Part shown: positions 2,136-51,787 of the stretch, piece by piece
How the letters are laid out: each line of letters begins with the position of its first letter
Numbering within the stretch: the stretch's first letter is position 1
NCBI GenBank assembly: GCA_009859145.1
Contig: VRVR01000002.1
Location: forward strand, 442,724 to 506,723
Direction: 5' to 3'
Source of the DNA: Andalucia godoyi And28
Lineage: Eukaryota; Protista; Jakobida
Length of the DNA stretch: 64,000 nt
Notes under the pieces: generated by a model
Database searches by the model: none
Told to the model about the DNA's origin: nothing
The model's input: the letters and a program-made list of their open reading frames with translations, nothing else
Position numbers and translations under genes: made by a program

Positions 2136-3026
2136 ATGGCACCTTTTGAGCAGACATTGTTTGGTCAGTACATGCTGGGTTCGGCCGCCGGATTGGTGGC
2201 GGTGTCGTGCACACACCCGATGGATCTTGTGAAGGTGCGGATGCAGCTTGCGAAGAAGGCAGCAGCGGCAACAGCATCCAGTGCGACGACGACTGCAAGG
2301 CCGCTAGGGGTGCTTGGGACGGCGGCGCAAGTTGTCCGAACGAAGGGGGTGTTTGGACTGTACAACGGGCTTACGGCCGCGTACACTCGGCAAGTGCTGT
2401 ATACAGGCACGCGGATTGCGGTGTATGATGCGCTAAAAGGATTGTTGTCGTCGGGTGACAAGCAGAGCTCGCCGTCGATGGCAAAGAAAGCAATTGCTGC
2501 AGCAGTCTGCGGATCAGTTGGAGCCGCCGTCGCGTGTCCCGCGGATGTCGTCATGGTCCGTATGCAGTCGAATGCATATCCATACAAGAACATTGCAGAT
2601 GGGCTGGTGCAGCTCACGAGAACCGAGGGTGTTGCAAGACTGTGGTCCGGCGCCACACCGACAATGCTCCGTGCGTCATTGGTTGCGATCGGGCAGCTCG
2701 CAGTCTACGACCAGACGAGAGATGCCCTTATCCATGCGGGGTATTTGAAGGCTGGACCTGCGGCGTACTTTGTTGCCTCCATGGTTGCTGGCTTTGCTGC
2801 AACTGCTTTTTCCAATCCAGTGGATGTTGTGAAAACCAGGGTCATGAACGGCTCATCTCCGGACCCGGTCGCTTGCGTCCGGGATATGATGAGAAACGAG
2901 GGTCCAATGGCATTTTGGAAAGGATTTGTTCCCAACTGGGCCAGACAAGGGCCGCAGACAATGATTACTATGGTGGCATACAACATTTTGCTCGATTTTG
3001 TCAAGGGTCGATCAAGTGCAAAGTAG
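2136..3026 (+). CDS. Mitochondrial carrier (SLC25), dicarboxylate/2-oxoglutarate carrier-like
   Basis: 296 aa with three Px[DE]xx[KR]xR signatures (HPMDLVKVRMQ, CPADVVMVRMQ, NPVDVVKTRVM). GLTAAYTRQVLYTGTRIAVYD and FWKGFVPNWARQGP resemble DIC/OGC/UCP-type carriers. Confidence 0.95.
   Translation: MAPFEQTLFGQYMLGSAAGLVAVSCTHPMDLVKVRMQLAKKAAAATASSATTTARPLGVLGTAAQVVRTKGVFGLYNGLTAAYTRQVLYTGTRIAVYDALKGLLSSGDKQSSPSMAKKAIAAAVCGSVGAAVACPADVVMVRMQSNAYPYKNIADGLVQLTRTEGVARLWSGATPTMLRASLVAIGQLAVYDQTRDALIHAGYLKAGPAAYFVASMVAGFAATAFSNPVDVVKTRVMNGSSPDPVACVRDMMRNEGPMAFWKGFVPNWARQGPQTMITMVAYNILLDFVKGRSSAK

Positions 3027-3126: not shown

Positions 3127-3156
<30 letters not shown>
3127..3156. repeat. (AAC)10 microsatellite
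   Basis: Read directly from the sequence. It lies between the carrier 3' end and the Fanzor-like remnant. Confidence 0.95.
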
Positions 3157-3158
<2 letters not shown>

Positions 3159-3319
3159 GAAACCACGAAAACAAGGACACCTGTCTTCAACACAACGTTT
3201 CTTCGCCCATCTCCAAGTTCCAGAGAGCCTCTGCTGTTGCCTTGGCGAGGGCGTCTGCAATACATTTGGTAAGGTCCCCAGGGATTCATAGCAGGACAGA
3301 ACAATTCGCGGAGCAGCAA

Positions 3320-3770
3320 CTGCAACTGCGCTGGCAGACGGCAAGTCCGGACTGTCGACGGCACTTGCTCCGTAACCTTTGTCGATACCATCTCTAGTGC
3401 TCAACATAGATCGGACTGAATCATCGCAAACACATTAACCCAGCAGTCGGAACAGATCCCTCACTGCAATTTGCAAGAATGAACTCAGCCCCTATTCGAC
3501 CAGGCACAGACCTCGTTCAGCTGGGAAGCAGCTTCCCCTCAAAGCGTGCGGTGCTTGTATCCTCCATCCGACGATCCATCGAGAAGCGGTTCAGGGCACT
3601 TCGAGCCTATCGACGAGTACTGCACGACCAAGAAGTGCTGCGCATGCGGAGGCTCGAGAGTCCGGCACTGCACCGTGAGCGTTTTCGTGTCCCCGGGGGG
3701 TTGAGACACCGTGCCACAGAGAACTGTCCATCTAACCACCGCTGCGTGGGCCGCGATGAGCATTCGTGAG
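3320..3770 (+). pseudogene. Degenerate Fanzor/TnpB-like RuvC + zinc-finger nuclease remnant (transposon-derived)
   Basis: Joining two plus frames gives DLVQLGSSFPSKRAVLVSSIRRSIEKRFRALR (3509-3604, frame 2) / IDEYCTTKKCCACGG (3609-3653, frame 3) / GLRHRATENC...VGRD (3698-3757, frame 2) / AAMSIR (3750-3767, frame 3). This order matches the Fanzor C-terminal half: xxxG...RRxxEKRF-xx-(V/I)DE(F/Y)xTSxxCxxCG...C...NRDxNAAxNI. Several frameshifts and stops are present, and no clear RuvC-I DPG motif remains. Confidence 0.6.
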
Positions 3771-3850
3771 TCCAGTCGCGGTTTCTTGTATCGGAATCCA
3801 TCGGGGTATTCCCAGTGCAAGCGAGTTGGAGTCTCTCGCGTAGGGGACTC
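3768..3850 (+). ncRNA. Candidate structured RNA (possible omegaRNA scaffold) directly 3' of the Fanzor-like remnant
   Basis: Closing stem GAGTCC(3768-3773)/GGACTC(3845-3850). Either CGCG(3777-3780)/CGCG(3837-3840) or the alternative hairpin GCGAG(3821-3825)/CTCGC(3835-3839) can form inside it, plus a small GGG-TATT-CCC hairpin (3804-3813). Function is inferred from position only. Confidence 0.25.
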
Positions 3851-11594: not shown

Positions 11595-14500
11595 ATGGAG
11601 CAGCAAGTTCTTTCGTTTGTTGTGTACTATTCCAAGCTTGGTCTTTACCAGCACATTCGGACTCTTTGCGATCAAGGTCTCAAGAAGCGGCCTTCAGACT
11701 CATTTCTGATATTTTGGCGATCGTTTTCGCTGTTGAAGCAAGGTGCGGTTGGAGAAGCTGTTCGTGGCTTCGAGTCGCTTCTTTCGTCAACGTCGACGAG
11801 TGCAAAGCATCAAGGGTCAAACAATGAATTGGATTTCTGTGCGCTGACTGCGCTCATATTTTCACACATGCAAGCTCGACTTGTCGATGACGATCAGGTG
11901 ACGATCCTGACGTCACATCTTGTGACTCTTACAATTTCAGAGGTCCCTGAGAAGGCGCTTGTTCTTGCCTGTGCCTTCCTGTGGCTTTCGCAAGATGACT
12001 CGCTTCCGAACGCAAACGCTGCAAACACAATTCAAAAGGCACGGGATATTGCATCGCAGAAAATTGGAAATGCGCTTCTGAAAGATCCAAATGGACAAGC
12101 TGCGCAGGCACTGAGTGTGTGGATGGCCACGCTTGTGGCGCTGCGTGGGTGGATGGATGTCGTAGCAATTGAGAGACCGTCAATTGTCCAGAAGTCTGGC
12201 GTGTTTTTCGAAGTCGCACTTGCCGGGGGCAGGAAAGATGTTCTGGGTCTGTGGGGAAAAGCAAAGTTTCTAGAGTTTCGAAATCAGCTGCCTGATGCTC
12301 TCGAATCGTTGAACAATCTTGTTGTGTCTGCTCAGTGGTTCTTGCCGGCTTTGACGGAGAAAGCTCGCATCCTTGTTCGGATGGGAGACTGGGACCAGGC
12401 TGTCGAAACAGGCCAGCGCGTTCTTGGAATGGATGCGTTCAATTTGGAAGCGTTGAGGCTGTTTGTCATGTACTTTTTGGTTCGACACGTGGGCGCGGAT
12501 GCTTCTTCGGCAGCAGCATTGCGTCTCGCCGACGTGACCGAGGCGTTGAGCAACTTGGAGCCCACAAATCATTCGTTGTTTGCCCAAGTTGCGGAAAGCG
12601 TCCATCGGTTTGTGGCGTCTCCGCAACTGAACGAAAACGTGATCAAGCAGGCGATTTCGCTCATTGAGAGAGCATGTCAAATAGCGCCGAAGGTTGCATC
12701 GTACTTTGCGCACTGGGGCTCCTTGATCCTCTGCACGCAGCCAGTCGATGTGACGTCCGCACGCATGCGATTTCGCAAAGCACGTGAGCTGGACGACACC
12801 AACACGGAGTCTTTCTTGGGGCTCATTCAATGCGATCTGATCGAAAGCAAGCTCAAGTCCGCAGAGGAGCAGCTGCTGTTCGTTTCTGCACTCACCGATT
12901 CTCTGGATCCCCATCTCGCTGCGCAAGTTCACGTGTTGCAAGCGCAATTCATGTGGAAGAGCGAGTCGAAGCGGCAAGAATCTCTTGAGCATCTTTCACA
13001 GGCGTATGCGATTCATTCCAAGTACTTGTCCTCATTGCCGGCCGGTCCTTCAGAGCAGTATGCATTCGCCTTGAATCCTCATTTCTTGATGCGTCTGGCC
13101 AGAGAATGCATGATTCACGCACCATCGGATCCCATCGCCGAGGGAGAGCACATTCCTGTCGCTGTTGGCAAGATCCTCCCTGTCTTGGATTTGCTTGCAG
13201 TTCATGCTCCCGCTTGCTTGGAAGCGGCTCTTTTGCATGCGAGATGCAAGTATCTGGTGCGAGATTTTGATGCAGCAAAAACGAGATGTTCTTCGCTGGT
13301 ATCCCAAATTCACCAGTCCCTCAATGCTTCATCAGGAGGCGTGTCGCCTGCGTCGGCGACCTCGGTCAAGACCATCCTATCCAGCGCCTATCTCTTGCTT
13401 GCGCAGATCCATCTCGCGGAAGGCCGCGCTCCCGCGGCTCTCAGTGCTCTTGATCAAGCACTTGCATCGGATTTTTCGATTCGCGACCTTCCGTTGTTTT
13501 CCATCATCAAAGCCAAAGTATTGGTCGTGGAGGCAACGGGATCCGTGCCACAATCGACGCCATTCCAGCAACTTTCATCGCAGCAGCAGCAGCAGCTAGA
13601 AGAAGCTTGCCGTCTTCTTGAACAAACGATTGATCTCCCAGGAAATCGCTCGTCATCCGTCCAGGATCGTGCCTCGCTGTTTGTTGAGTTGTCGGCATTG
13701 TATTCTCGAATGGGACGCGTGATTGAGGCAACAAAGTTCATATCGGATGCACAGTCGCTCTTCCGTGGGACTCCAGAGGAAGGCAGAATCACGCTCTCCA
13801 ATGCGAGCATTGCCCTCTATCGTGGTGAAATTGATCAGGCACTCAGCATTTTAAAGTCAGTTTCCCGGTCGTCTCCATACTTTATGGCGGCGCGCATGCA
13901 AATGGCTCGTGTGTATCTTGACAGCAGACATGACCGCCGAGCGTATACTCGATGTCTCGAGGAGGTTGCAGAGGACAGTCCGTCCGCACAGTCGTTCATC
14001 ATGCTTGGAGATGCAATGATGAACATCCAAGATCCAGAATCGGCCATTCGATACTACTCTTCAGCTCGAAGTCTTTTGAAAGGGACAGCAGCAGCAGGAG
14101 GTGGTGGTGGTGGCGGCGGCGGCGGTGGCTCGAATGCAAATGTCAATATGGAAATCATTGTCGCCTCCAAGATTGGTCGCGCACTTGTTGCGACGTATGA
14201 CTATAAGAAGGCAATCGATTATTATTCTTCAGCAGTGAAGGCGGATCCGACTCGCACGCAGCTTCGACATGATCTGGCGGAGTTGTATATTCGTCTTCGT
14301 GATTTTGAGAAGGCCGAGGCAATACTGCGCGACGGAATTGAGCAAAAGAAGACCTCGTTGTTTGGCATGATTGATGATGTGCGCTCGCAAATCATTCTTT
14401 CTCGTGTCTACGTTGTCGGATTTTCTAACCGCGAAAAGGCGCTCCAGACTTTGGAAGATGCTCGTGCGAAGCAGCAGCAGGTGCTCAAACGTGCTCGTTC

Positions 14501-18830: not shown

Positions 18831-21800
18831 CTATTCCCATTCACCGATCCAGTGATTGTCCTCGGTGACTTCTTCTTCTGCAGCTTCTTCGTCCTTTTCT
18901 TCTTCTTCTTCGTCGTCGTCGTCCTGGTCCGTCGCATCACCGCCGCCATCATCACCATCATCACCTTCCGCATGTGCTTCATCCGGCCGAACATTGAAAT
19001 CCGTATCAATAGAGTGACAATGCCGGATCGCAAACCACAGCTTGGCTCGCATAATCTCGTCGGTGGAGTACTGCGGCAATTGAATCGTGAAGAAGCACGT
19101 CGCAGATTGCGGAAGATACCGGTCATGTTCGGCAGTTGGCGCGCGCACAAACCCCTTGATGACAAGGGTGAATCCCGACTGCGCCGCAGGAAGACGAGAT
19201 CGACCGCTGACAAATCGAAGGAAGCCGCAACGGAATTCTGGCGATTCCGACGCAAATACTCTCCAGAACCGCTGGATATGAGCATCCGATTCACTGCAAG
19301 TTTCATACGATGTGTGCGATTTGAGCAATTCAACATCGACATCACGTTCACCAGTAATCCGCAACTCCGCCTCTGTTTCCGTGCACAAGGATAAGCAAGA
19401 GGGCGGGACAATGAGGTGAAATCCAGCGAGCATTTCGTGGGTTGCTGCATCAAATTCGCGCGACCGGGAACGCAGCAAGCTCCTCACGTACCGTTGTCGT
19501 GACGTCCAAGACAGAGCCGTGTCGTCGCCGTCATAGCCAAGAGATACGGCAGTTCCGTCCGTCAACTGCGAGGAGAATGACAGAGTCGCAAACGCCTCGT
19601 CAAAAGCATCCTCCGACGAAATCCCGTGACGGTGAGGCCGCAAAAGGGAATCAACAATCGTTTGCAGGCCTTGATCTAACGGAAACAGATCACGAGAAAC
19701 ACGAACTTGTTGACCAGTCATCATTCGGAAGAGTATCCCAGAGATGTCTAGCGGAATCGGAGCATTGGTTCGGACTGCAATGCCCATCAGAATACCGACA
19801 AACCGAAACAGTTTGAGTTTCAGAGGAGAAAATTGCGAGGATGGAATCGGTACGAAACGATCACGATTAGAACCAGTCTCGTATTGGGCATTCAGACAAG
19901 GCATGAAAAGAGGAATCGTCGCCGTTTCAATGTACCTTGCAGGATCAAAGGCTCCCGATCCTGCAGCGGAATGGTGAAGTTCCCGAATTATGGGGAAATG
20001 CAATTCAGAAACCATGGTGGAAATAGCCTCATGGTAAGGTCCACCATAGTCATCGGCACCTTCCCCGATGAACAACACACAGAAAGCACGACGAGGAAGG
20101 CGCAGCAGAAACGGATCGACAGGGAATAGCTGTCTGTACGCTTGCATAAAGACAGCGTCCGTAGGAGGTTGTGAGATTGAAGGTCGTATTGCCAAATGGC
20201 GATTCAATTTCACATCCCTCGGATCCGCTGTTTCAGACTTTGTCTGACTCAAGGATGAGGACAGAACCCACTCCTCCTTGACGGAAATATGAATTACACC
20301 TCGAAGCAGCGAAAGCCGTAAGCCCAAGTTGGAATGCAACGACGGAACGGATGCTCTCATGAAATGATCCTGCGTAAACGCTGCCGCTGGACTGTTGGTC
20401 GCAGAAGCAGATGAAGACGCCGAGGCCAATGGAATTGGAGAAGGACTCACGAGTGGTGGCTCCGCATTCGTACCAGCAAGCGACGACATTGAGGAGGCTC
20501 GAGAAAGAGATGAAGATGCAGAGGACGCGCATGCAGATAAGAGGCACTTGAAATTACGCGCCTCCATTTCCCATTTTAATGCCGGAATTGGTTGGAAGTA
20601 AGATGGAACCGTCCACAAATACCGGCCGTGTACTGTCAAAAGCTCGTTGAATTTCTGAATCAAAGCAAACCGGAATTGAAGAACATGCAGTGGAAACGAC
20701 GCAAGGGACGACAGATCGGGACGTTCATGACGAAGACGGTCTGCATGGACAGAAATGGTGGACAACGGCAAGGTGGCAATATCAGACTTGTCTGAAGACT
20801 GTAAAAACAGGATGCCTCGCCGAAGATTGGCAGCCGAACGTTCCGCGCTCTCACCTTCCGCACACGCTGACGCTTGAACAAGCTTCAACAGCAGTCTGTC
20901 ATGGTCCTCTGTCCAATGCTCGGTCAAGATCCGCAGTGTCTCGTAAAATCGATTCTCCTCTGTTGGATTCAAGGCAGCGTCGTCCGCCTTCGGTTCCGGC
21001 TGCAGTACAGGGCTGATGTACAGTCGCACACCGTATTCAATTCCTTCCGGGTACAGCGTCGGGAACCGGAAGGTGATGGGCGCTTCCAAAGGAAACCGAA
21101 TCTTCAACAGTGCATGATACAGCGGATGTTTCCGAGATTTGTAGCAAGCACTGCAGAAATCCGGGTTTTCAGAAGGATCTACTGCTGTGTCGTAGTACCG
21201 AATGCCGATGATGGGACTCATATTGCAATAGAAGCACGTCGTCCCAGGATGAATCACCGCACCAGCTTGGAATCCCTGTTGCAAGTCTTGGTACCGTACT
21301 GGTGCATCCCCGTGGGACTCGGGGTTCTGCAAGGGTGGTGCCTGTAAGGGCATCGCATCCGCTGGCGGCTGCAGAGCAGACAAAGACCGAACATGAAACG
21401 GTATTTCAAGGAATACGTGCCGCATGTCGTGAACATTGTCAGTAAAATACAGAGTATCGCAGTTTCCACAAATGTCAAAATCTCTGCAATGCATGCATTT
21501 GAATCTGGTCCCTAAACAGGCTTCATCGTCGTGATCACAATAAACAGACTGATGTTCTTCCTGAAAGTCGTCGTTCTCTCGGATTCCATAACGGAACGAC
21601 GATCCTTTCAACATGACGGACTGCGGAAACGAATCTGCACCGGTGTGCACGAACGAAACAGCTTCATCAGCAGTGCTCTCGATGAAGAACACATGGGATT
21701 CATGCAGCTCGCAGCGATGATCGAAGCGCACATTGATGGACGTGGCATCGGGAATATCGAGGGTGTTGGAAAAAGATGAGCATGACAAGGGATGGCGATC

Positions 21801-24800
21801 AAGATCCACAATCAATTCCCTGGCAGTCTGTTGGTACAAGTCGTTCCACAGTGCCACCAGTCTTGCATGCGGTACTTGGTGTACCAGACCCAGCAAGAGA
21901 TCCGCAACAACGGACAGATCAGAAGTCGTTTGCAAATCGGCTGAATTGATATCCGAAATGTCCACAGTCGAATTCAAGAGCGAAACTCGCCGGCCACTTT
22001 GGTCTTGGAAAGCAAGGAACACAGAACAGAGGAAATCTCGCAAGCCAATAACATATGGTGACACCGGTGCCTGTGGCTGGGATCTCTTGCGAGAACACAC
22101 AACGAATGCTCGACAAAGGGCAACGAATTCCGGGATAAACACGGGGACCCCCGAGTCTGGACACACGAAGTCTGTAAACTTCATCCACTGTCGGGCGATA
22201 CACAGCCGCAGTATTCGAGACATGACGAACAATATGCGCTGCTTCTGGCCTACGAATGGAGTGAGAAGAAGCTTCCAAAACGATTTCAACAGAGAGAGAC
22301 AGGCAGCCTCCTGTTGCTCGTTAGAAAGAAACGGAACACGGAATGTCTCCAGCAAATCCAAAAACACCGAAGCAAACCACAACGGACGGAATACGTCAGT
22401 TCCAAAGGGAGAACTAGAGGCATTCTTATCCGTAACACGCGAAGGCAAATGGGGCCACTGGATGCGAGAAGAATATTCAGCAGATGCAACGATCTGGTCT
22501 GCCATTTTGCGAAGAGCACGTTCGAACAAAGAGAAGGCAGGATTTCCGTAATGGGCAATCAAATCCATGCAGAACATCTTGCCGACAGGCGATAGCTCCT
22601 GGCATTCCCAGAGCGAGAAAGACGACAATGATTCCATCTCGTGCTCCATATGGTTGCGAGGAACGGCTTCCATTCGTAATGCCTCCGTCTCGAACAATCC
22701 AAAAACGTCACGCAAAGCCGTTTCGTCCCCAAACGCTTGTAGGAGTTCTTCAGGCTGATATCCCGGCACTCCGGAAATTCGCTGTTCTTGGCGTTCTCGA
22801 ATCACACACCAAAACGCATTTCGCAACAAAAGAATACCAAAATCGAAACAGGCAGTCTGGAAGAAGTGTGCGACACTCGTGGAAACAACAGACAGAGAAA
22901 AGTCTAGTACGGCTCTCATGGGGCGCTCCAAGAGAGAAGTTGGGATCCAGGCCAGCTTTCGCTTGGATTTTTCATCATCCACAAACTCCAACAGGATCCA
23001 ATTCTTTTCCGAATCCACGCGACGCACTATTCCAACCCGACCTTCCATTTCCGATCCTACAGGATTTCCAATTCCTGCAAGGGCCGACTTGGACAACTTG
23101 CGCTCGGAGGCTCGGGAGGCTGGCATGACTTCCAATAACATTCCAGGATGCACGTCCCCGCACAACACAGTTCGAGGAAGTGGAACTGGATGTCGAGAAC
23201 CATAGTAACGAGCAAGCCCGCTCTCTTGGACGTCCTCCACAGCAACAATTCTCAGGAACTCTTTGATCAGTGTAGGCGCACTGTCCGATGAGGGCGCAGT
23301 AAGAACCACAGACGCACTCGGTGCTTCGTAGCTGCCCGAAACGTCAACAGCACCGACCATTGGGGACTCTCCCTGATCTTCGTCCGTAACTTCTCCATGG
23401 TCCTCATCTGTCGTCTCCGCGTAATACTCATCTGTCACTTCATCCTCTTCATCTTCGTCGTGCTCCTCATTATCCTCCTCCTCTGCGTCATCATCTCCCT
23501 CGACTTCTTCTTCTTCTTCTTCTTCTTCCTCATCCTCTTCCTGGTCCTCTTCTTCATCACCGTCACCATCACCATCATCCCCTGGATGCTCCAGTAGCCA
23601 ATTGGCAGCTGCGGAAACGTCGCCACGATTCAGCCTCAGTGCTCGCTCCGCGTGTGCTCGAACGAAACCCATGATCACCAACTCCTCTAACAATTCCTGG
23701 TTCACAGCAACACGCGGAGGGGGTCTTCGAGCAGGGGACGCGGATGTTCGGGCTGGTGACCGAATCCGACGAGTGCTCGGTGACGGGGCCGGCATTTCAT
23801 CGCGAATCTCCGGGATCGTGAACTCGGCGTGTCCAAACACATGCGACGGGTCAAACCGGAAAGCATCCCGGCCGAAATTGACCTTGACACGAGTTCCTTT
23901 TCCGAGTAAACCAACAACAGGGTAAAAGTGATCCTGAACACCTCGAAAGGCGATGCCAAGATGCTTCCCATTCTTGGTGAAAAAGACCGAACCGTCGGAC
24001 TTGATGTAACCGCAGCCGACTACATCATCCTGTTTGAAAGGTTCCCACTTGCGGCTTGCTTGCAAAGAGTGATACAAACCGCCGTCATCAGAGTGATACC
24101 CGTAGGATGAGCCATACCATCCTGGCATGCCCCACAGTTGTTCTTCGAGAAGTGCGGGATACAAGCCGATGCCGACAAAGTGATCGCCTACGAGCTGCAC
24201 AACCCGAATCTCGAAGTAAAAGACATTGGTGGAAAAAGGAATTGGTGCATTCGCACGCACCAACACTGCATCCTGATTCTTCTTGGACGCACCCGTGCAC
24301 TCCACAATCGTCCGTTCTTCGTCCACCAACTTGCATGTTCGAACGTATTCAAACGCAAATGCAGTGGGTGAGAAAACCGACCATGGTTTTACAGGAGCGT
24401 GGAATCCATTCATGTCCGACAAGCCAGGAGACACATCTTTGCAACCAAACTCCATAAAGTTGGTGACAGACTTGCTCAAATCCTCAATGCTTGCGTACGG
24501 TCCGACAGAAGGCTCGCGTCTTGCCAATTCAAACAGCTGTCGGACGAGTTTTGCAGCTGATGGATGGCGTAAGACATCTGACACATGCGAAATACTTCGA
24601 CGCATCGTGAACGAGAACACCTTGCACACAGACATCCACAGTTCAGCATGGTCTGTGTGCACCGGTATTTCAGTCAAGGTCGGCTTCAGCCCTAGCTTGG
24701 AAGACCATTCTGACAAGAATTCCAACAACAGAAGAATTTGCCGTGTCGACAGGAGAGAGAAAACCAATCCACTGTTCGGAACAAGAGGCACCAGATCATG

Positions 24801-27800
24801 AATCACCACATCCTCCATAGTGTCCACTGAGAACGACGGTGGACAAACAATTACTGCAGACTTTGTCAATGGGACCACTTCCAACACAACTGGGCATGAC
24901 TGGATACCGATTGCATTCTCAAAATTGCTGAAGAATGCAGCACGAGAAACAACGCTGTCTCCAACGTGAACAGAAGCGGACGATGCCGTGTCAGCATCGA
25001 TGCAGGAGAGGAACCGGAACACACAAAACGCATGAGGATCCACACTTCCATGACTATTCGCAAGTTGCTGAATGGCCAAGTCTAGCATGCCAGAAAGCGT
25101 CTCTTTCCAGTCAGCAGACAGCATCGACAGATGCAAAATCAATTTTGCAACCTCAACTTGCACCAACCGATGGTGCCGAATTGTAGACAAGGGAGACTCC
25201 TTGAATCGACGATTTTGCTTCTTGTAAACGCTCTCCGAACCTTGCGCTTTTGCAGATTCAATCAAGTAAAAACCAGCGTCCGCATGCTCCTGTTGAGTTT
25301 TGCACGATCCCCAATAGGATGCACCTTCATCATTGTCGACATGAAACCACATTCGATCATCCTTGACACCGATGGCTGTTGCAGCGCCATTCGGAGTATG
25401 CACCCGATCACCAGAACGGAATCCGAAAGGACGGCATGCGAAATCCTCCGTTATAAACACAAAAAATTCTCGGCTTACAGCTTTGTAGCTGACGAATCCT
25501 GGTCCAAAATCCGATATGAAAGGGGCACAAATCATCGGCAGCGCATGCATACCACCAGCGTCTTCCTGGAGGGATTCAGGGCGGCGTGAAGCTTCGCTGT
25601 CGTCTGCGTCTTCCAGCAGGCCTCGATCCAGCTCACCAAAGTACGACATCGATTTCACCACGCCAAAGACCCCAATCAAAATGTGAAATATTTTTGATGC
25701 AAACTCGGGATGATTCTTCAGCGATGTGTGGGTGCACAGCAGAGAAACAAGGCGCACCAGCAAACGTGAACAACGGACAGAATAAAAGTATCCCTCTTTT
25801 AGCAAATTCACGATTCTCAGGATCGACGAATGTTCGATCGAATTTTCACAAGCCGTAACGAGCACAAAGACGATGCTCAGCAAATTGAAAGACTCCTTTT
25901 CAGACGGTTTGCCTAAACACAGTAAGTCAATCGTGTGCTCGACATTCCGAATGACAAAACACAGCAACCGAGATCCGGAAGTCAAAGAATAGGAATCTTC
26001 CAGCAGCGGAACACATGCCTGGAGTGCAAGAAGCAGCGACGGAACAGATTTCTGAGGAAACTGATCAAGAACCTGGACAGCAAAATCCCTGGTTGCCAAG
26101 AATGATGACCGCAGCATCACCGAATCCACAGAAAAGTACAATGCAACCAGATGGTTCCATGCATCATTCGAAGAATCGGCGGATACGATTTGAAGAAGCG
26201 TGCGGTTTAGAGAGTCATGTGACTCCACAACAGCACAGTCTGTTCGCGTCAAGACGTCTCGGTGGTTTGTCAGAAATTCGCAGAACTGTCTCAGGCAAAT
26301 GAGGAACGGTCCGTTTAGTTTGAAAAGACGAATGATTCTTTCAAATGACGAAAACACCTGAGCCAGAGAAGAAACATGGCGAGAATATGGTTCAAAAAAC
26401 TGCATGAACCCCGTGTCAGAAAATTCTAAAGACGTCAAGAAGCCAAGAATCAATGAATACATATCGCTTTCATAGCTCTCGCACTTCCTACGCTGCTCGA
26501 GCGTTCGCCGAGTTTGAAGCCAGTGATGGAATGCTGCATCACCTTCGCTGGACCAAACGAGTCGAAAATACGTTCCTTTTTGAAAATGTCGGCAAAGAAA
26601 GGTCGCACGGTTCTTGACGCGATCGAGCAAGGCATCGTCCACCTTGGACACCAAAGTAGTACAATATTGCCGAGCTGCGAGCACCATCGCGCGATATGGG
26701 TCCCGAAGAAATGAGAAGATGTCAGATGACCCATCAAGGAATGACCGGTCGTTTTGCAACTCCAGAACTTTTGCATACAACTGGCTTAGTTCCGTTGTGC
26801 AGTCGAAAAGATGCGCAAAACACAGTATGATGGAATTGAACAATTCCCACACCGCTTTCTTCGCATGCTCCGACATTGATGCCTTAAGAACGGGGCTCAT
26901 TAGAATGGAGCTATGGCGATCCGAGAGCCCATTCTTCCAGTCCAGCACGTGAGGTTGATCATGCCGGATTGACAACACCCCCCTTTCAAGCAGCGACCGA
27001 AAAGGCTGCGGAATTGTACTCTTTGGGAAGGTGTGCCGCAAAATGTCCTTGAAAGATCTTGCAAAGGCACCAAACAACGACAGCAGAGAAGACGCAACCC
27101 AGTCGGCTGAATGATCAAACAAGACGCCCATGAAAGTAGGCTGTCTTCTCGAAACCTCTCGAACGGAATAAAATGGAACCATGACGAAGCGGAAGCCCCA
27201 GTCCGAGGCGGAGCCGTAGTCAGCTTTGAACCTCACAAAAATCTTTTCGCTGAAGAATGCAATTGGATTTGCATCTCCAGTAGGAAAATCGGAACCTGAG
27301 TATGTCAACATGACGCGAGAATCCTTCTCCGATGATATTTCCAAAAGATCCCCGGATCTAGTCTTGCAGCGCGGATCAAAGAACAAGTATATGACCTCCG
27401 CTCCAAGACATTCTGTGGAGAATTCAAAGACCTTTGATCCGCAAGGGTGAGGGGATTCAACGACGACCAAAGGCATTCTCAGCGAAATCAAATTATGAGA
27501 GTCTGCAGAAACACCTGAATTGCTAGTACCCACTAACCGAGAAACGAAGCTGAACAGCAAATCCATTGGAACCGGAATAGAAAGTGCTTCAACACTCCAC
27601 AGCGCGATGGAAAACAGAGATGGCAAAAACAAATCAGAAATTTTGTTTCCAAGAGATAAGACAGACAACTGTTCGCAAGAATTGAACAAAACAGACAAGA
27701 CCTCGGAGGAGAAGGAAGCGTTTTGGGAGAATACATCGCGCAAGAGCAGTTTCGCAATATGAAACTCTAGATGCGGCGCAGAAGCAAAGATGTCGCCCTG

Positions 27801-30236
27801 CCCTGTCAAACATGCAGTGTCGTGCTTCTTCAAGTCGTTAACAATCATCAACAGGAAAGACATCCCCGAATGTTCGTAGAACAGGACGCATGGACGCCTT
27901 TCCACTTGCGCGACCACGAGTTCGACAATCCATGACGAGAATGATCCACAAATCAAACGCTTTAATAGATCGCAACGATCCGCAGGAGTCTTGTACAGTA
28001 CGGGAAAGCTGCACGAAATGATGTCTGCGACGCGACACTGAGCAATGGCTGCATGCATCGTCCCAGAAATTTGCGAAAGCTGAAGAACTTCAAACAGTAC
28101 AGATTCCAGCAAGCTTTTCAGTTGAAGAAAATATCGAGGAGGCAGCGACGATTCACTGAAACCATTCTTGAACGCGGTAAACAAGTTGACCTGCAAAATG
28201 GACAGCAGGGAAATAATGCAGCTCATCTCCAGTTCCAGACTGGCGACTGAACCAGCTCCTTGGGCACGCAGTATTGTTGCATCCACAAATGCTTGAAGAC
28301 TTTGCAACAGTTCATTGAAGAGAGCAGGGCAGGCATCGATGACAAAACTCTTAGAAAACAGCGAATTCATATCTTCGACTCTTTCCGAGGGAATGCACAA
28401 GTACAAGCCAGAGGTAGAAGACAAGTGCGGAAACGCCAAGCATTCTAAACGAGAGAGAATAGAGCCAATGACGTTTCGAGGCGTCGCCTCGACTGCAGTG
28501 GGCGACACTAGTTGAAAAAACGGGGATTTCGCAATCAGAGACATTGGATCCGAGACGAAGCGATCAATTCCGCCAGGATTCCAGTGCGAAAGCGATCTCA
28601 ATGACGGTGTGTTGCAAGACCACTCCCACACACGGCGCGTTCCAAAATCGAAGCACAAAACTACAGAATGCTTGTAGTCTAGCACCATTGCCATAGAAGA
28701 TGAAAACTGGAAAATTGTACGCGAAGGCTCCAGAGATGCATCTCCAAAACGAACAACCCACAGTTCACTCTTGCTGCTGTCAATAGAAGATCTCGAGGAG
28801 AGGATCATACGCGATCCAGTTACAAAAATCCCGACAACATCAGCAGACTTTGGTAGAGACGGAGACGTGATATCCAACCGGAAGCACTCCTTGAAATTCG
28901 AGCGCTCGTCAAAGGATACAAGAGTTCCGCGCACACTTTCTCCTTCTTGGACAGAGTAGTAGCAATGAATAAATGTACCGTCCGAACACATCAATGTACT
29001 CCCAGGCAAAGACGCCAAATCTGGCACTGCCACGCGCCTGAGCTCTCGCAGTGTAAGTGGATCTAGATAAACGACTTGTGCAACGTCGGAAATGATAACC
29101 TTGTCTGAAACGCACAGTATGGTCCATCGTCGTTCTGATGAAAGATCCGATGGATGCACATTTGACACTAACGGATGGTACTGTCGGTCCAGATGACCAT
29201 ACAGGACTTTTTCTACGCCAAACTCTTCGGATAGGAGGTAGATGAAAGAGCCATCTGTTCCGATCGAAGAATGCAATGTGCTTGGGGCAGGTTTCTTTGC
29301 AATTGCGTCGGATGAGAGTGCTGGGAAAATTTTCCAGTTCCACCGGAACAGCAGCTTGAAAGAGGATTGGGGGGCAAATACTGGGTCCACTTCTAGAAAT
29401 TCCTTGTAATTTTTGGGGAGGCAGACGCTATCGACAGAGCCGGCGACGTTGAACAACAAATGAACGGATTGCACGAGTGTCGCCAACGAGCCGTGTGCAA
29501 AGGCAAACGACAAATGCGATGTCGCTACCCTGGAGGCTAGTTCAGAATGCCGATTGGAGATGCCGGCAATCCAATTTCCGACTGCGACCAAGGAATCGTC
29601 CATATGCATGATGGTGTTCATGGACGCAAACCGCTGTCTGTTCACAATGGACTCGATAGTCGTCAAAATTTTGTCTGTGAGCTCCACGTTCTGCAACGTT
29701 TCGATGACCTTCATAATGTCTTCAAACACATCCACAATAAACCCCACGGAATTCGCAGATGGGCGATCCTTCTTCATGGCTTCATTCCGAGCGTCGATCC
29801 AGTCAAACGTCTTCGGAGTCCGATCCTTCATTGCATTGAACGTTGAATACCACTTCTTGAACACAAACAAGCGCTTCTGATGTAAATGCTCTTCCGCAAT
29901 CGTCGTCGAAGGCATCATGCACTTTTTTGCAATGGAGCGCTGCAGCGCCCACGAAGCAGCCTCCAAAAGCCGCTTCTTTTCCTCGTCCGATTTGAACGCA
30001 AAAGACGGATGGCCAGCAAGAGCCGATATGTGCTGCGTGAAAAATCGATATCTCTCCAGCGAAGAATCCTTTGCGGGAACAAGTTTTTCAAAAGACGAGT
30101 TTGAAACCTGGCCCGATTCAACTTCTTCCATCACATTATCAAAGTCTAACATTGAGTAGTACGCTGTGTCAAAGACGCCTTCCTTCAACAGAATCGTCGA
30201 GCAGATTGTCAACACACTCCGATCATCACGCGTCAT
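18831..30236 (-). CDS. Giant HECT E3 ubiquitin ligase (HERC2/HECTD4-like) with SPRY, UBA, two ZZ-like fingers and a C-terminal HECT domain
   Basis: 3801-aa single ORF. SPRY: FYFEIR...MPGWYGSSYGYHSDDG...DVVGCGY...FFTKNG. UBA: LEELVIMGFVRAHAERALRLNRGDVSAAANWLLEH. ZZ-like: YCDH...RFKCMHCRDFDICGNC and CFYCNMSPIIGIRY...DFCSAC. HECT: FIGEGADDYGGPYHE...LPQSATCFFTIQLPQYS...IRHCHSIDTD. Confidence 0.93.
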   Translation of the reverse strand: MTRDDRSVLTICSTILLKEGVFDTAYYSMLDFDNVMEEVESGQVSNSSFEKLVPAKDSSLERYRFFTQHISALAGHPSFAFKSDEEKKRLLEAASWALQRSIAKKCMMPSTTIAEEHLHQKRLFVFKKWYSTFNAMKDRTPKTFDWIDARNEAMKKDRPSANSVGFIVDVFEDIMKVIETLQNVELTDKILTTIESIVNRQRFASMNTIMHMDDSLVAVGNWIAGISNRHSELASRVATSHLSFAFAHGSLATLVQSVHLLFNVAGSVDSVCLPKNYKEFLEVDPVFAPQSSFKLLFRWNWKIFPALSSDAIAKKPAPSTLHSSIGTDGSFIYLLSEEFGVEKVLYGHLDRQYHPLVSNVHPSDLSSERRWTILCVSDKVIISDVAQVVYLDPLTLRELRRVAVPDLASLPGSTLMCSDGTFIHCYYSVQEGESVRGTLVSFDERSNFKECFRLDITSPSLPKSADVVGIFVTGSRMILSSRSSIDSSKSELWVVRFGDASLEPSRTIFQFSSSMAMVLDYKHSVVLCFDFGTRRVWEWSCNTPSLRSLSHWNPGGIDRFVSDPMSLIAKSPFFQLVSPTAVEATPRNVIGSILSRLECLAFPHLSSTSGLYLCIPSERVEDMNSLFSKSFVIDACPALFNELLQSLQAFVDATILRAQGAGSVASLELEMSCIISLLSILQVNLFTAFKNGFSESSLPPRYFLQLKSLLESVLFEVLQLSQISGTMHAAIAQCRVADIISCSFPVLYKTPADRCDLLKRLICGSFSSWIVELVVAQVERRPCVLFYEHSGMSFLLMIVNDLKKHDTACLTGQGDIFASAPHLEFHIAKLLLRDVFSQNASFSSEVLSVLFNSCEQLSVLSLGNKISDLFLPSLFSIALWSVEALSIPVPMDLLFSFVSRLVGTSNSGVSADSHNLISLRMPLVVVESPHPCGSKVFEFSTECLGAEVIYLFFDPRCKTRSGDLLEISSEKDSRVMLTYSGSDFPTGDANPIAFFSEKIFVRFKADYGSASDWGFRFVMVPFYSVREVSRRQPTFMGVLFDHSADWVASSLLSLFGAFARSFKDILRHTFPKSTIPQPFRSLLERGVLSIRHDQPHVLDWKNGLSDRHSSILMSPVLKASMSEHAKKAVWELFNSIILCFAHLFDCTTELSQLYAKVLELQNDRSFLDGSSDIFSFLRDPYRAMVLAARQYCTTLVSKVDDALLDRVKNRATFLCRHFQKGTYFRLVWSSEGDAAFHHWLQTRRTLEQRRKCESYESDMYSLILGFLTSLEFSDTGFMQFFEPYSRHVSSLAQVFSSFERIIRLFKLNGPFLICLRQFCEFLTNHRDVLTRTDCAVVESHDSLNRTLLQIVSADSSNDAWNHLVALYFSVDSVMLRSSFLATRDFAVQVLDQFPQKSVPSLLLALQACVPLLEDSYSLTSGSRLLCFVIRNVEHTIDLLCLGKPSEKESFNLLSIVFVLVTACENSIEHSSILRIVNLLKEGYFYSVRCSRLLVRLVSLLCTHTSLKNHPEFASKIFHILIGVFGVVKSMSYFGELDRGLLEDADDSEASRRPESLQEDAGGMHALPMICAPFISDFGPGFVSYKAVSREFFVFITEDFACRPFGFRSGDRVHTPNGAATAIGVKDDRMWFHVDNDEGASYWGSCKTQQEHADAGFYLIESAKAQGSESVYKKQNRRFKESPLSTIRHHRLVQVEVAKLILHLSMLSADWKETLSGMLDLAIQQLANSHGSVDPHAFCVFRFLSCIDADTASSASVHVGDSVVSRAAFFSNFENAIGIQSCPVVLEVVPLTKSAVIVCPPSFSVDTMEDVVIHDLVPLVPNSGLVFSLLSTRQILLLLEFLSEWSSKLGLKPTLTEIPVHTDHAELWMSVCKVFSFTMRRSISHVSDVLRHPSAAKLVRQLFELARREPSVGPYASIEDLSKSVTNFMEFGCKDVSPGLSDMNGFHAPVKPWSVFSPTAFAFEYVRTCKLVDEERTIVECTGASKKNQDAVLVRANAPIPFSTNVFYFEIRVVQLVGDHFVGIGLYPALLEEQLWGMPGWYGSSYGYHSDDGGLYHSLQASRKWEPFKQDDVVGCGYIKSDGSVFFTKNGKHLGIAFRGVQDHFYPVVGLLGKGTRVKVNFGRDAFRFDPSHVFGHAEFTIPEIRDEMPAPSPSTRRIRSPARTSASPARRPPPRVAVNQELLEELVIMGFVRAHAERALRLNRGDVSAAANWLLEHPGDDGDGDGDEEEDQEEDEEEEEEEEEVEGDDDAEEEDNEEHDEDEEDEVTDEYYAETTDEDHGEVTDEDQGESPMVGAVDVSGSYEAPSASVVLTAPSSDSAPTLIKEFLRIVAVEDVQESGLARYYGSRHPVPLPRTVLCGDVHPGMLLEVMPASRASERKLSKSALAGIGNPVGSEMEGRVGIVRRVDSEKNWILLEFVDDEKSKRKLAWIPTSLLERPMRAVLDFSLSVVSTSVAHFFQTACFDFGILLLRNAFWCVIRERQEQRISGVPGYQPEELLQAFGDETALRDVFGLFETEALRMEAVPRNHMEHEMESLSSFSLWECQELSPVGKMFCMDLIAHYGNPAFSLFERALRKMADQIVASAEYSSRIQWPHLPSRVTDKNASSSPFGTDVFRPLWFASVFLDLLETFRVPFLSNEQQEAACLSLLKSFWKLLLTPFVGQKQRILFVMSRILRLCIARQWMKFTDFVCPDSGVPVFIPEFVALCRAFVVCSRKRSQPQAPVSPYVIGLRDFLCSVFLAFQDQSGRRVSLLNSTVDISDINSADLQTTSDLSVVADLLLGLVHQVPHARLVALWNDLYQQTARELIVDLDRHPLSCSSFSNTLDIPDATSINVRFDHRCELHESHVFFIESTADEAVSFVHTGADSFPQSVMLKGSSFRYGIRENDDFQEEHQSVYCDHDDEACLGTRFKCMHCRDFDICGNCDTLYFTDNVHDMRHVFLEIPFHVRSLSALQPPADAMPLQAPPLQNPESHGDAPVRYQDLQQGFQAGAVIHPGTTCFYCNMSPIIGIRYYDTAVDPSENPDFCSACYKSRKHPLYHALLKIRFPLEAPITFRFPTLYPEGIEYGVRLYISPVLQPEPKADDAALNPTEENRFYETLRILTEHWTEDHDRLLLKLVQASACAEGESAERSAANLRRGILFLQSSDKSDIATLPLSTISVHADRLRHERPDLSSLASFPLHVLQFRFALIQKFNELLTVHGRYLWTVPSYFQPIPALKWEMEARNFKCLLSACASSASSSLSRASSMSSLAGTNAEPPLVSPSPIPLASASSSASATNSPAAAFTQDHFMRASVPSLHSNLGLRLSLLRGVIHISVKEEWVLSSSLSQTKSETADPRDVKLNRHLAIRPSISQPPTDAVFMQAYRQLFPVDPFLLRLPRRAFCVLFIGEGADDYGGPYHEAISTMVSELHFPIIRELHHSAAGSGAFDPARYIETATIPLFMPCLNAQYETGSNRDRFVPIPSSQFSPLKLKLFRFVGILMGIAVRTNAPIPLDISGILFRMMTGQQVRVSRDLFPLDQGLQTIVDSLLRPHRHGISSEDAFDEAFATLSFSSQLTDGTAVSLGYDGDDTALSWTSRQRYVRSLLRSRSREFDAATHEMLAGFHLIVPPSCLSLCTETEAELRITGERDVDVELLKSHTSYETCSESDAHIQRFWRVFASESPEFRCGFLRFVSGRSRLPAAQSGFTLVIKGFVRAPTAEHDRYLPQSATCFFTIQLPQYSTDEIMRAKLWFAIRHCHSIDTDFNVRPDEAHAEGDDGDDGGGDATDQDDDDEEEEEKDEEAAEEEVTEDNHWIGEWE

Positions 30237-30770
30237 CTGTTTCCTATATAATGAACTATAAGAAAAAGAACAATCACGAATTCAAGTTACCTTAAACCCA
30301 CGCGAACTCAGCAACAGCAACAGCAACAGCAGCACCGACAGCAACAACGACAAGAAGAATAACAAGAATAAGAAGACTGGGAGCACAAAAACAGCACACG
30401 AATCCTAGCGGACGCAGAAAATAATATGATAACAATATAAACGATAAAGAAAAACGTATAAGTAGAAGAAGGAAACCGAAAAACAAGAAGAAGAAAAGAA
30501 AAAAAACACACACAAAAATCGGCGAAAAATATTGGAGAAAAAGCGTCGAGTCGAAAATGCGACGTCCTCTCAAACTTGAATCCACGATATGTGGTTGAGT
30601 CTCTACCCTCTACTGCCGTGACCAAAAAAAAGCGCTCTTTTCCTAAGCTTTACAGCGTGAATTGCGTGTTTGTTATCACCAAACAGGTCGAGAAGTTTCT
30701 CGTGCTGCGTGCTATTCCGGCATCATATCGGCGAGTGAGTGCGAGGGAGTGAGTGTAAGGGGGTGAGAAA

Positions 30771-31598: not shown

Positions 31599-31737
31599 TT
31601 TTTTTAATTAAAAAATTAGAAAATAAGGAAAACAGGACAGAGCAACGTCGCATGCAGCGCGAAGAATATTCACATGATAGTAATCGATGATATTGCCCCT
31701 CCGAGGCAGCGTGAGCCTTGAGCATTCGAGTCCCGAT

Positions 31738-31738
<1 letters not shown>

Positions 31739-31764
<26 letters not shown>
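31739..31764. repeat. (CT)13 microsatellite
   Basis: Read directly from the sequence. Confidence 0.9.
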
Positions 31765-31768
<4 letters not shown>

Positions 31769-32122
31769 GTGCTTCGTGCTTGCGGCTGCCTCCCGGGCGT
31801 TTCCCGCAAAGACAGAGCAGCGACGTCTGGGCCGCTTTGTCTTCTCTTCCCTCGTTCCCCTTCGACTTCCGAGCTCCTGCCTGTCGTAGTAGCCAGCAGC
31901 ACATCCCAGTGTCAAGTATCAAGTGTCAAGCACCAGGCTCTCTACGACCAGCAGTGAGCACCATCCGAAAAATGCCCCGGTCTGGCTGGCGGAGTTCATC
32001 CGCTCCCGAATTCGCTGTGGCCCTTCTTCTTCTACGCACATTCTCCGCACATCTATTTATTTATTTATTTATTCACTCATTCATTCATTATCTTCCGAAA
32101 CTCTGTTCCGCATTTTGGCGCT

Positions 32123-51313: not shown

Positions 51314-51715
51314 CAGACGCAGAGAGGCTCGTTGCACTTTGAGAAAGGACCTTTCGTTCCCTACTTTTCGTTTTTGTTTTCGTTTGTTTTGCCCCTTTTC
51401 TGCCTTTTGCCATTCCTTTTCTCTTCTTTTCTCTTCTTTTCAAGAATTCTTGTGTTTTTTTATATAATAATAATTTTCTTGTGCAGATCGCTCTTCAAGT
51501 TTCTCCTTTTCTGTCTGTCTCTCTTTCACTTTTTTTGGCGAATTCGTGTATGCGCATTTTGTTTGCTGAACGGAAAACATTTTGCCATTGACACATATTA
51601 TTCACGGATACTGCTGCCTTTCTCCTCCGAAAGAAGAAGAGGAACCAGAAACAGAGAAGAGGTTTTTGGGTATTCTTCCCATCTTTTTTTTCTTTTTCTA
51701 AATATCCTGCCGGAT

Positions 51716-51719
<4 letters not shown>

Positions 51720-51768
<49 letters not shown>

Positions 51769-51787
51769 CCCCCCCCCCCCCCCCCCC
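51720..51787. repeat. (TC)~21 followed by a C19 homopolymer, just upstream of the dynein start
   Basis: Read directly. It ends about 30 nt before ATG 51819. Confidence 0.9.

What the first reader, a model, noticed from the sequence alone, without database searches (positions are those of the whole stretch)
3320..3770. Decayed Fanzor (eukaryotic TnpB-like RNA-guided nuclease) hidden in an apparently intergenic gap
Seen: no ORF in the track explains this gap, but two plus frames interleave to give DLVQLGSSFPSKRAVLVSSIRRSIEKRFRALR, then IDEYCTTKKCCACGG, then (after the G6 run at 3695-3700) GLRHRATENCPSNHRCVGRD, then AAMSIRE. A weaker LRWQT…LLRNLC lies upstream at 3326. Established: Fanzor1-type proteins have a Gly in place of the canonical RuvC-II Glu, a relocated catalytic Glu in (V/I)DE(F/Y)xTS just before a CxxC zinc finger, and a RuvC-III NRDxNAAxNI motif, in this order and spacing. 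The RD and AAMSI codons overlap on the octamer GCCGCGAT (3750-3757), as expected if …GGC CGC GAT xxx xxx GCC GCG ATG… collapsed by slippage between two copies of that octamer (inference). If real, this lineage hosts, or hosted, a Fanzor transposon family, and intact copies elsewhere could be a new RNA-guided nuclease system.
Basis: partly seen in the sequence, partly recalled or inferred. Interest (0 to 1): 0.85.

Follow-up and report, generated by a model that had tools for sequence, protein, structure and literature searches.

The report
Possible Fanzor nuclease scrap between genes
A 14-codon stretch in the spacer between two ordinary genes of the protist Andalucia godoyi matches the signature motif of Fanzor/TnpB RNA-guided nucleases far better than chance, but no other part of such a gene can be shown, so it is at most a dead fragment.

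Summary
The window is nuclear DNA of the jakobid Andalucia godoyi (GCA_009859145.1, contig VRVR01000002.1). The flagged gap lies between a mitochondrial-carrier gene and an SNF2 helicase gene.

One piece is statistically real: IDEYCTTKKCCACG (3609-3650, frame 0). It scores 28.3 bits on a core profile I built from 30 published Fanzor1 proteins. The next best of 128,000 six-frame positions in the window scores 13.9. The chance expectation is 3e-5 per window and about 0.01 per 20-Mb genome.

The other pieces are the 'RuvC-II Gly' stretch, the second Cys pair, 'GRD', 'AAMSIRE' and the slippage story. They score no better than random places in the same window in frameshift-tolerant tests (p 0.10-0.86). 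Real Fanzor1 flanks score about +35 bits on each side. The locus scores -0.7 and +2.7.

No relative turned up in 1.84 billion representative proteins, the PDB, or the viral and metagenome contig sets. I found no second copy in the window, no convincing terminal repeats and no RNA structure. A 60%-GC patch (3479-3806) does coincide with the proposed relic.

Verdict: most likely a non-functional scrap of a Fanzor1-type gene (about 0.5). Chance resemblance is a serious rival (about 0.35). There is no evidence for an intact system.

The parts
3609..3650 (+). Core motif IDEYCTTKKCCACG (frame 0). It corresponds to the Fanzor1 alternative catalytic Glu plus the first CxxC of the zinc ribbon. It is the only element with statistical support.
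   Evidence: It scores 28.3 bits on the Fanzor1 core PSSM against 13.9 for the next best in the window. No hit reached 27.9 bits in 120 Mb of simulated DNA. The exact P is 2.5e-10 per position. It is the top hit of the local Fanzor1 HMM among 2188 six-frame fragments, E = 0.005. The only Pfam family hit for the frame-0 piece is PF07282 Cas12f1-like_TNB, E = 0.064. The closest natural core is P0029, VNEYCTTKTCSKCG.
3483..3701 (+). Frame-0 open stretch of 73 codons that carries the core. It ends at TGA 3702 and has no ATG start.
   Evidence: Codon-usage LLR is 0.055 per codon (genes 0.215 +/- 0.083). GC by codon position is 0.52/0.60/0.70, with periodicity p = 0.09.
3509..3604 (+). Frame-2 stretch DLVQLGSSFPSKRAVLVSSIRRSIEKRFRALR, read by the first stage as the RuvC-II (Gly) region. 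Not supported.
   Evidence: The upstream profile score is 9.0 bits, p = 0.68. The anchored extension is -0.65 bits, p = 0.86. The pairwise maximum over 30 Fanzor1 sequences gives p = 0.10 unanchored and 0.77 anchored. The stretch adds 0.8 bits to the HMM score.
3695..3700 (+). G6 homopolymer, the proposed frameshift site between frame 0 and frame 2.
   Evidence: Sequence. The best frameshifted path through this area to the RD state scores 24.98, lower than the core alone at 27.99.
3725..3757 (+). Frame-2 CPSNHRCVGRD, read as the second Cys pair plus the RuvC-III RD. Not above chance. The spacing is CX5C, not CX2C.
   Evidence: The downstream profile score is 11.2 bits, p = 0.27. The anchored score is 2.74 bits, p = 0.23. 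Intact distant relatives score 12-20 bits and close ones about 34.
3750..3770 (+). Frame-0 AAMSIRE, read as NAAxNI. It overlaps the RD codons on GCCGCGAT. Not supported.
   Evidence: Sequence. Joining it needs a second frameshift plus a 2-residue deletion, and the frameshift-tolerant alignment does not choose that path.
3479..3806 (.). GC-rich patch (60% GC) inside the spacer. Its extent coincides with the proposed relic.
   Evidence: It lies in the top 0.6% of 300-bp windows. Other gaps in the window are 40-50% GC and coding sequence is 51.5%.
3155..3168 (+). Left arm of a 14-nt imperfect inverted repeat (ACAAGAAACCACGA) that brackets the region. Probably chance.
   Evidence: 13/14 complementary. 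My estimate of the chance expectation is about 0.13 in 1.3 kb. There is no TSD and no further copies in the window.
3776..3789 (-). Right arm of the same inverted repeat (TCGCGGTTTCTTGT on the + strand).

Best explanation
The spacer between the mitochondrial-carrier gene (2136-3026) and the SNF2 helicase gene (from 4086) contains a short, dead fragment of a Fanzor1-type (TnpB-superfamily) nuclease gene. Only the 14 to about 20 codons at 3603-3662 are demonstrable. In a working Fanzor these encode the strand carrying the relocated RuvC catalytic Glu and the first Cys pair of the zinc ribbon.

Shown: the motif is there and is far rarer than chance. It resembles Fanzor1 cores more than Fanzor2 or TnpB cores. 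It lies in non-coding, compositionally odd (GC-rich) DNA.

Inferred: a Fanzor-bearing mobile element or a copy of its gene once landed here. Alternatively, a piece was pasted in during repair. In this compact genome it was then whittled by deletions and mutation until nothing else is recognisable.

It does nothing now. There is no open frame, no RuvC-I, no complete zinc finger, no provable RuvC-III and no guide-RNA-like structure.
For: - Core PSSM score is 28.3 bits against a runner-up of 13.9 in the window. There were zero hits at or above 27.9 bits in 3 x 40 Mb of Markov order 1/3/5 simulations.
- The exact expectation is 3.2e-5 per window and about 0.01 per 20-Mb genome.
- The independent Pfam model PF07282 is the only family hit for the frame-0 piece.
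- The core scores higher than the cores of Fanzor2 and bacterial TnpB on the Fanzor1 profile.
- It is 10/14 identical to the core of a real Fanzor1-like protein, P0029.
- A 60%-GC patch at 3479-3806, atypical for spacers here, coincides with the region.
- Fanzors are already known in another Discoba lineage, Naegleria lovaniensis (PMC10432273 supplement).
Against: - Flanks carry no Fanzor signal: -0.65 bits upstream and +2.74 downstream. That compares with medians of +38 and +34 for 20 real Fanzor1-like proteins, and +12 to +20 downstream even for Fanzor2 and TnpB.
- A perfect core beside fully unrecognisable flanks is not what uniform neutral decay gives. It requires a fragment whose left edge falls almost exactly at the motif start. 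The preceding HFEP does not fit the hydrophobic strand seen in every real family member.
The frame-0 stretch has none in the viral or metagenome contigs.
- No Andalucia protein appears among the named Fanzor1-profile hits.
- There is no second copy in the window, and no TSD or convincing TIR.
- I do not know how many windows and motif families the first stage screened, so the look-elsewhere factor is unknown.
Confidence: 0.5

Rival explanations
1. Chance resemblance. The spacer is ordinary non-coding DNA (3' UTR of the carrier gene, promoter and 5' UTR of the SNF2 gene). One of its six reading frames happens to spell the most information-rich 14 residues of the Fanzor/TnpB signature. The other 'motifs' were assembled by free choice among three frames.
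For: - Similarity stops exactly at the edges of the high-information motif. All flank tests are at chance: p = 0.10-0.86 against Fanzor1 and 0.50-0.94 against Fanzor2/TnpB.
- The published profiles find nothing significant.
- No relatives were found anywhere.
- Coding potential is no higher in any frame than in non-gene ORFs of the window.
- By eye I 'found' two mutually exclusive collinear alignments of the upstream flank, in frame 0 and in frame 2. Both fail the statistics, which shows how easily such patterns arise.
- A scan over many windows and many motif families would produce rare hits like this.
Against: The expectation is 3e-5 per window and 0.01 per genome for a score this high. Chance hits picked near a detection threshold should sit near 20 bits, not 28. 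The match also sits in a GC-rich patch that is unusual for spacers.
Confidence: 0.35
2. A relic of about 100 codons (3509-3770) spans RuvC-II to RuvC-III of a Fanzor1. It is broken by three frameshifts, at about 3603, at the G6 run and at the GCCGCGAT octamer.
For: - The order and rough spacing of G ... DE-TT-CxxC ... C-x5-C ... RD ... AAxxI agree with short-loop Fanzor1 proteins such as the Chlamydomonas CRe-2 to CRe-5 and Mucor MCi-6 sequences.
- The proposed extent equals the GC-rich patch.
- Distant relatives give only 1.6-10.5 bits upstream and 12-20 downstream on my profile. Two indel penalties could therefore hide a real downstream signal.
Against: - No flank score exceeds the null.
- The best frameshifted path to RD scores less than the core alone.
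- Three indels in 170 bp imply heavy decay, which is hard to reconcile with a flawless 14-residue core.
- The second Cys pair is CX5C. RD and AAMSI overlap on the same bases, so both cannot be read as they stand.
Confidence: 0.1
3. Part of an unannotated, lineage-specific host gene or exon that happens to contain a zinc-ribbon-like CxxC element. Candidates are the 96-codon ATG ORF at 3479-3769, or a minus-strand ORF.
For: The patch has coding-like GC and few stops in several frames. The published assembly's gene models were built with RNA-seq that I cannot see (PMC7050145).
Against: - The 96-codon ORF is not on record as a called gene.
- Codon-usage LLR is about 0 for it, against 0.215 +/- 0.083 for genes.
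- The motif lies in frame 0, not in that ORF's frame.
- The plus-frame pieces and the two minus-strand ORFs gave no significant Pfam hits.
- The stitched plus-strand peptide, about half of it from that ORF's frame, found no homologues.
Confidence: 0.05

Closest known systems
Fanzor1 (eukaryotic TnpB-like RNA-guided nucleases; Bao & Jurka 2013, PMC3627910; Saito 2023, PMC10432273; Jiang 2023, PMC10530073)
   Same: The [VI]DE[YF]xT[TS]KxCxxCG junction of the relocated RuvC Glu and the first zinc-ribbon Cys pair is present. It is near-consensus at every conserved position (28.3 bits). The 'EYCTTK.C' version occurs in real members (P0029). MDe-2 has VDEYRTTKTCSFCG and MDe-10 has IDEYLTTQICSICG.
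   Different: There is no open reading frame, no RuvC-I, no demonstrable RuvC-II Gly region, no second Cys pair in frame and no significant RuvC-III. There is no omega-RNA-like structure, no host transposon and no further copies. Flank scores are about 0, against about +35 bits per side in real members.
Fanzor2 / IS607-type TnpB (e.g. Naegleria lovaniensis and Acanthamoeba Fanzor2)
   Same: It has the same superfamily motif (VDESYTSKTCGGCG in ACa-1). Naegleria shows that Discoba can host Fanzors.
   Different: Fanzor2 and TnpB cores score lower on the Fanzor1 profile (16-27 bits). The flanks of the locus show no similarity to Fanzor2 or TnpB either (p = 0.94 and 0.50). The generic TnpB profiles are not significant.
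Cas12f1-like_TNB / OrfB_Zn_ribbon domain (Pfam PF07282)
   Same: It is the only Pfam family that touches the frame-0 piece. Profile positions 18-43 of 60 align with the motif.
   Different: The score is 13.9 bits against a gathering cutoff of 26.3 (E = 0.064). The second half of the ribbon does not align.

Membership tests
Fanzor/TnpB superfamily (motif of Bao & Jurka 2013: D-X(125,275)-[TS]-[TS]-X-X-[C4 zinc finger]-X(5,50)-RD) | [TS][TS]-x-x-CxxC preceded, in Fanzor1, by the alternative catalytic Glu ((V/I)DE(F/Y)xT[TS]) | tested here: met
   IDEYCTTKKCCACG at 3609-3650 scores 28.3 bits. The expectation is 3e-5 per window. PF07282 is the only Pfam hit for the frame-0 piece.
Fanzor/TnpB superfamily | Complete C4 zinc finger (second Cys pair in the same reading frame) | tested here: not met
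   Frame 0 has one further Cys (3669) and then a stop at 3702. A second pair exists only in frame 2, as CX5C at 3725-3745.
Fanzor/TnpB superfamily | RuvC-III RD (nRDxNAxxN) 5-50 residues after the zinc finger | tested here: inconclusive
   GRD at 3749-3757 is in another frame. The downstream score is 11.2 bits (p = 0.27) and the anchored score is 2.74 bits (p = 0.23). Intact relatives give 12-56 bits.
Fanzor/TnpB superfamily | RuvC-I Asp 125-275 residues upstream of the [TS][TS] | tested here: not met
   Only 194 codons separate the carrier gene's stop (3026) from the motif, and they are broken by stops in all frames. Upstream pieces give no profile hit. My local profile did not include RuvC-I, so this rests on Pfam and on reading the frames.
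Fanzor1 | Gly/Pro at the RuvC-II position about 45 residues before the alternative Glu, in the lIxfG context | tested here: inconclusive
   A Gly (3524-3526, frame 2) lies 30 residues upstream, after a frameshift. The upstream score is at chance (p = 0.68 and 0.86). This flank also has low power for distant relatives, which score 1.6-10.5 bits.
Fanzor1 | Significant match of the protein to family profiles or members | tested here: not met
   Stitched peptide: PF07282 E = 9.2, guided_TnpB E = 1.5. The PDB, the 5.8e9 clusters and the 1.84e9 representatives gave no relevant hit.
Fanzor-bearing transposon | Terminal repeats/TSD, partner transposase, omega-RNA next to the 3' end, multiple copies | tested here: not met
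   There is one 14-nt inverted repeat at about chance level, without a TSD or other copies. RNA folding z-scores are -0.12 and -0.06. Neighbours are host genes. There is no second copy in the window. The genome-wide copy number could not be tested.

The most novel reading that the evidence does not exclude
Andalucia godoyi hosts, or recently hosted, its own divergent Fanzor1-like family. Intact copies may sit in the transposon/viral-like subtelomeric scaffolds that were left out of the published assembly. This locus would be a whittled-down insertion of that family. It would be the first Fanzor1-type trace in jakobids and a lead to a deep-branching RNA-guided nuclease.
Probability: 0.12. Interest if true: 0.55.

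Novelty: new member of a known kind. Interest (0 to 1): 0.25.

Why it matters
If the scrap is genuine, it would be the first trace I could find of a Fanzor1-type element in a jakobid, one of the deepest-branching eukaryote groups. No paper in the library links Fanzor to Andalucia or jakobids. It would justify a directed search of the raw A. godoyi data for intact copies.

In itself it is a dead fragment with no function. Fanzors are already known in many eukaryotes, including another Discoba lineage, so the gain is modest.

There is also a lesson about method. Stitching motifs across reading frames by eye produces convincing-looking but statistically empty alignments. Here only the in-frame core survives calibration.

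Tried and rejected
- Pfam and NCBIfam on the stitched peptide and on each frame gave only sub-threshold TnpB-type hits.
- The stitched peptide found nothing relevant in the PDB or in the 5.8-billion-cluster word search. The exhaustive phmmer over 1.84 billion representatives returned two bacterial tandem-repeat proteins whose scores add up over repeats, which I consider spurious.
- A search for the frame-0 peptide in the viral and metagenome contigs found nothing. Two earlier attempts failed because the query was too short.
- blastn and tblastn of the region against the window found no second copy.
- Rfam and RNA folding gave nothing. The two Rfam matches are far below gathering scores.
- The tables in the Saito 2023 supplement cut sequences at 400 residues, so they were useless for C-termini. 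I used Bao & Jurka's Additional file 3 instead.
- A first Markov simulation timed out and was redone vectorised.
- I made three alignments by eye:
  - Frame 0: 'FSWEAASPQSVRC + 18 aa + IDEY' against MDe-10.
  - Frame 2: 'RF + 6 aa + IDEY' and 'GG.R.R....C' against Chlamydomonas CRe-2 and CRe-4.
  - 'NHR..GRD..AM.I' against Mucor MCi-6.
  All three were rejected because anchored, frameshift-tolerant scores are at chance.
- The 14-nt inverted repeat as a transposon end was rejected as about chance.
- Codon usage as a discriminator was too weak at this length.

Full report
**Where we are.** The 296-residue mitochondrial-carrier gene at 2136-3026 maps exactly to NCBI assembly GCA_009859145.1, contig VRVR01000002.1. 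That accession is the nuclear genome of the jakobid Andalucia godoyi (PMC7050145). The genome is about 20 Mb, compact and intron-poor. The paper states that subtelomeric scaffolds rich in transposon/viral-like sequence were left out of the assembly. The flagged region lies in a 1,059-bp spacer between the carrier gene and an SNF2-family helicase gene (first ATG 4086). A histone deacetylase gene is next downstream. Other spacers in the window range from 122 to 1,735 bp, so the length alone is not unusual.

**The observation.** So are the G6 run (3695-3700) and the octamer GCCGCGAT (3750-3757). The gap is not free of ORFs. A 96-codon ATG ORF (3479-3769, frame 2) and several overlapping ORFs on both strands exist. 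None shows host-like codon usage, and the 96-codon ORF is not on record as a called gene.

**Database searches.**
- The stitched peptide gives no significant profile hit: PF07282 (Cas12f1-like_TNB, the TnpB zinc ribbon) E = 9.2 and NCBIfam guided_TnpB E = 1.5.
- The frame-0 piece alone hits PF07282 at E = 0.064, 13.9 bits, cutoff 26.3. That is the only family listed for it.
- The stitched peptide found nothing relevant in the PDB or in 5.8 billion protein clusters by word search.
- The exhaustive HMMER search of 1.84 billion representatives gave only two bacterial tandem-repeat proteins whose scores add up over repeats.
- No relative of the frame-0 stretch was found in the IMG/VR or JGI metagenome contigs.
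- No paper in the library links Fanzor with Andalucia or jakobids. Two Fanzor surveys' supplements do not list Andalucia (one file was stored truncated).

**A calibrated test.** I took 30 real Fanzor1 C-terminal regions from Additional file 3 of Bao & Jurka 2013. They come from the Hessian fly, Mucor, Phycomyces, Chlamydomonas, Chlorella, Cyanidioschyzon and a Dictyostelium-like sequence. I aligned them and built a 138-state profile. Its core is 'vdEfrTSkvCafCg'.

As an ungapped 14-position matrix, the locus sequence IDEYCTTKKCCACG (3609-3650) scores 28.3 bits. The next best of about 128,000 six-frame positions in the window scores 13.9. In three sets of 40 Mb of Markov-simulated DNA (orders 1, 3 and 5, both strands) the maxima were 21.9, 24.2 and 25.5. 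Exact convolution with the window's own six-frame residue frequencies gives P = 2.5e-10 per position. That is 3.2e-5 expected per window and about 0.01 per 20-Mb genome. The simulation counts at lower thresholds agree with it.

The core scores higher on this Fanzor1 profile than real Fanzor2 or bacterial TnpB cores do (16-27 bits). A profile search of the protein collection returned 190 Fanzor1-like proteins. One of them, P0029 from a Logan assembly, carries VNEYCTTKTCSKCG. So the core is a statistically real, Fanzor1-flavoured signature.

**The flanks.** I wrote a profile-versus-DNA Viterbi that allows frameshifts (-6 bits) and in-frame stops, and calibrated it on the rest of the window.
- The best local path anywhere in the window is the core alone (27.99 bits). 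Extending it across a frameshift to the RD state lowers the score to 24.98.
- The downstream part of the profile scores 11.2 bits within 3651-3830 (p = 0.27 against 708 null windows). The upstream part scores 9.0 bits (p = 0.68).
- The best of 30 pairwise frameshift-tolerant alignments gives p = 0.15 downstream and 0.10 upstream.
- Alignments forced to abut the core give -0.65 bits upstream (p = 0.86) and +2.74 downstream (p = 0.23) with the profile. Pairwise they give p = 0.77 and 0.66.
- Fanzor2 and TnpB flanks do no better (p = 0.94 and 0.50).

Power controls put these numbers in context. Twenty real Fanzor1-like proteins not used for the profile give medians of +38 and +34 bits. Distant Fanzor2 and TnpB proteins give 1.6-10.5 bits upstream and 12-20 downstream.

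The downstream test could still miss a distant relative carrying two indels. I also produced attractive by-eye alignments of the same upstream DNA in two different frames to two different Fanzor1 subfamilies. Both fail the test, which shows how unreliable eye-stitching is.

**Other features.**
- There is no second copy in the window.
- A 14-nt imperfect inverted repeat (3155-3168 / 3776-3789) brackets the region. It is near chance expectation, partly low-complexity, lacks a target-site duplication and has no other copies.
- RNA folding of both flanks is unremarkable (z = -0.12 and -0.06). Rfam gives nothing.
- One independent oddity supports 'something is here'. The stretch 3479-3806 is 60% GC, in the top 0.6% of 300-bp windows. 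Other spacers are 40-50% GC and coding sequence is 51.5%. Its extent matches the proposed relic. Codon-position GC in frame 0 (0.52/0.60/0.70) differs from the host-gene pattern but is not significant.

**Weighing.** A 28-bit core is too rare to dismiss at 3e-5 per window. A chance hit picked by eye should also lie near a detection threshold, not 8 bits above it. On the other side, a flawless core next to flanks with no signal is not what uniform decay produces. It requires a short fragment whose left edge falls within a codon or two of the motif. The preceding HFEP does not fit the hydrophobic strand that precedes the motif in every real sequence. I also cannot know how many windows and motif families the first stage screened.

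**Comparison with the known.** Fanzors carry Gly or Pro at RuvC-II and an alternative Glu about 45 residues away (PMC10530073). The family motif is D-X(125,275)-[TS][TS]-X-X-[C4]-X(5,50)-RD (PMC3627910). Of these defining features, only the [TS][TS]-xx-CxxC element with its preceding Glu is met. The full C4 finger and RuvC-I are not met. RuvC-III and the RuvC-II Gly are inconclusive. The locus should therefore not be filed as a Fanzor gene or pseudogene. At most it is a Fanzor1-like fragment. Fanzor2 is already known in Naegleria, another Discoba lineage, so a jakobid trace would extend a known distribution rather than open a new class.

**Verdict.** The locus is non-functional, and its interest is low to moderate. 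The decisive step is a search of the full A. godoyi data, including the omitted subtelomeric scaffolds, together with RNA-seq and read mapping over the spacer. I could not run either.

Noticed in passing
window 3479-3806: A 330-bp patch of 60% GC sits inside an otherwise 36-47% GC spacer. It is in the top 0.6% of 300-bp windows, while other spacers in the window are 40-50% GC. A second GC-rich patch in an apparent gap lies at 31695-31994.
   Followed up: partly
window 3127-3159: A (CAA)n microsatellite of about 11 units lies just downstream of the carrier gene. Similar CAA/TTG-rich runs occur near 30320-30375 and 41985-42016 (blastn self-hits).
   Followed up: no
window 3155-3168 and 3776-3789: A 14-nt inverted repeat (13/14) brackets the candidate region. 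There is no TSD and no other copies in the window, and it is about at chance expectation.
   Followed up: yes
window 18831-30236 (-): A single uninterrupted ORF of 3,801 codons, by far the largest gene in the window. I did not characterise it.
   Followed up: no
window 14070-14141 (+): A low-complexity coding stretch inside the 11595-15842 gene gives repeated short tblastn hits to the tails of Chlamydomonas Fanzor1-like proteins (P0009, P0011, P0052). This is compositional, not homology.
   Followed up: partly
L002 (Logan SRR18067371 contig, 1701 bp) 1195-1665: P0029 is a 156-residue Fanzor1-like C-terminal protein with the core VNEYCTTKTCSKCG, the closest natural match to the locus core. Its source organism is unknown to me.
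   Followed up: partly
window 51468-56243: A stretch of about 4.8 kb has no ATG ORF of 250 codons or more on either strand. It may hold intron-containing or short genes. I did not examine it.
   Followed up: no
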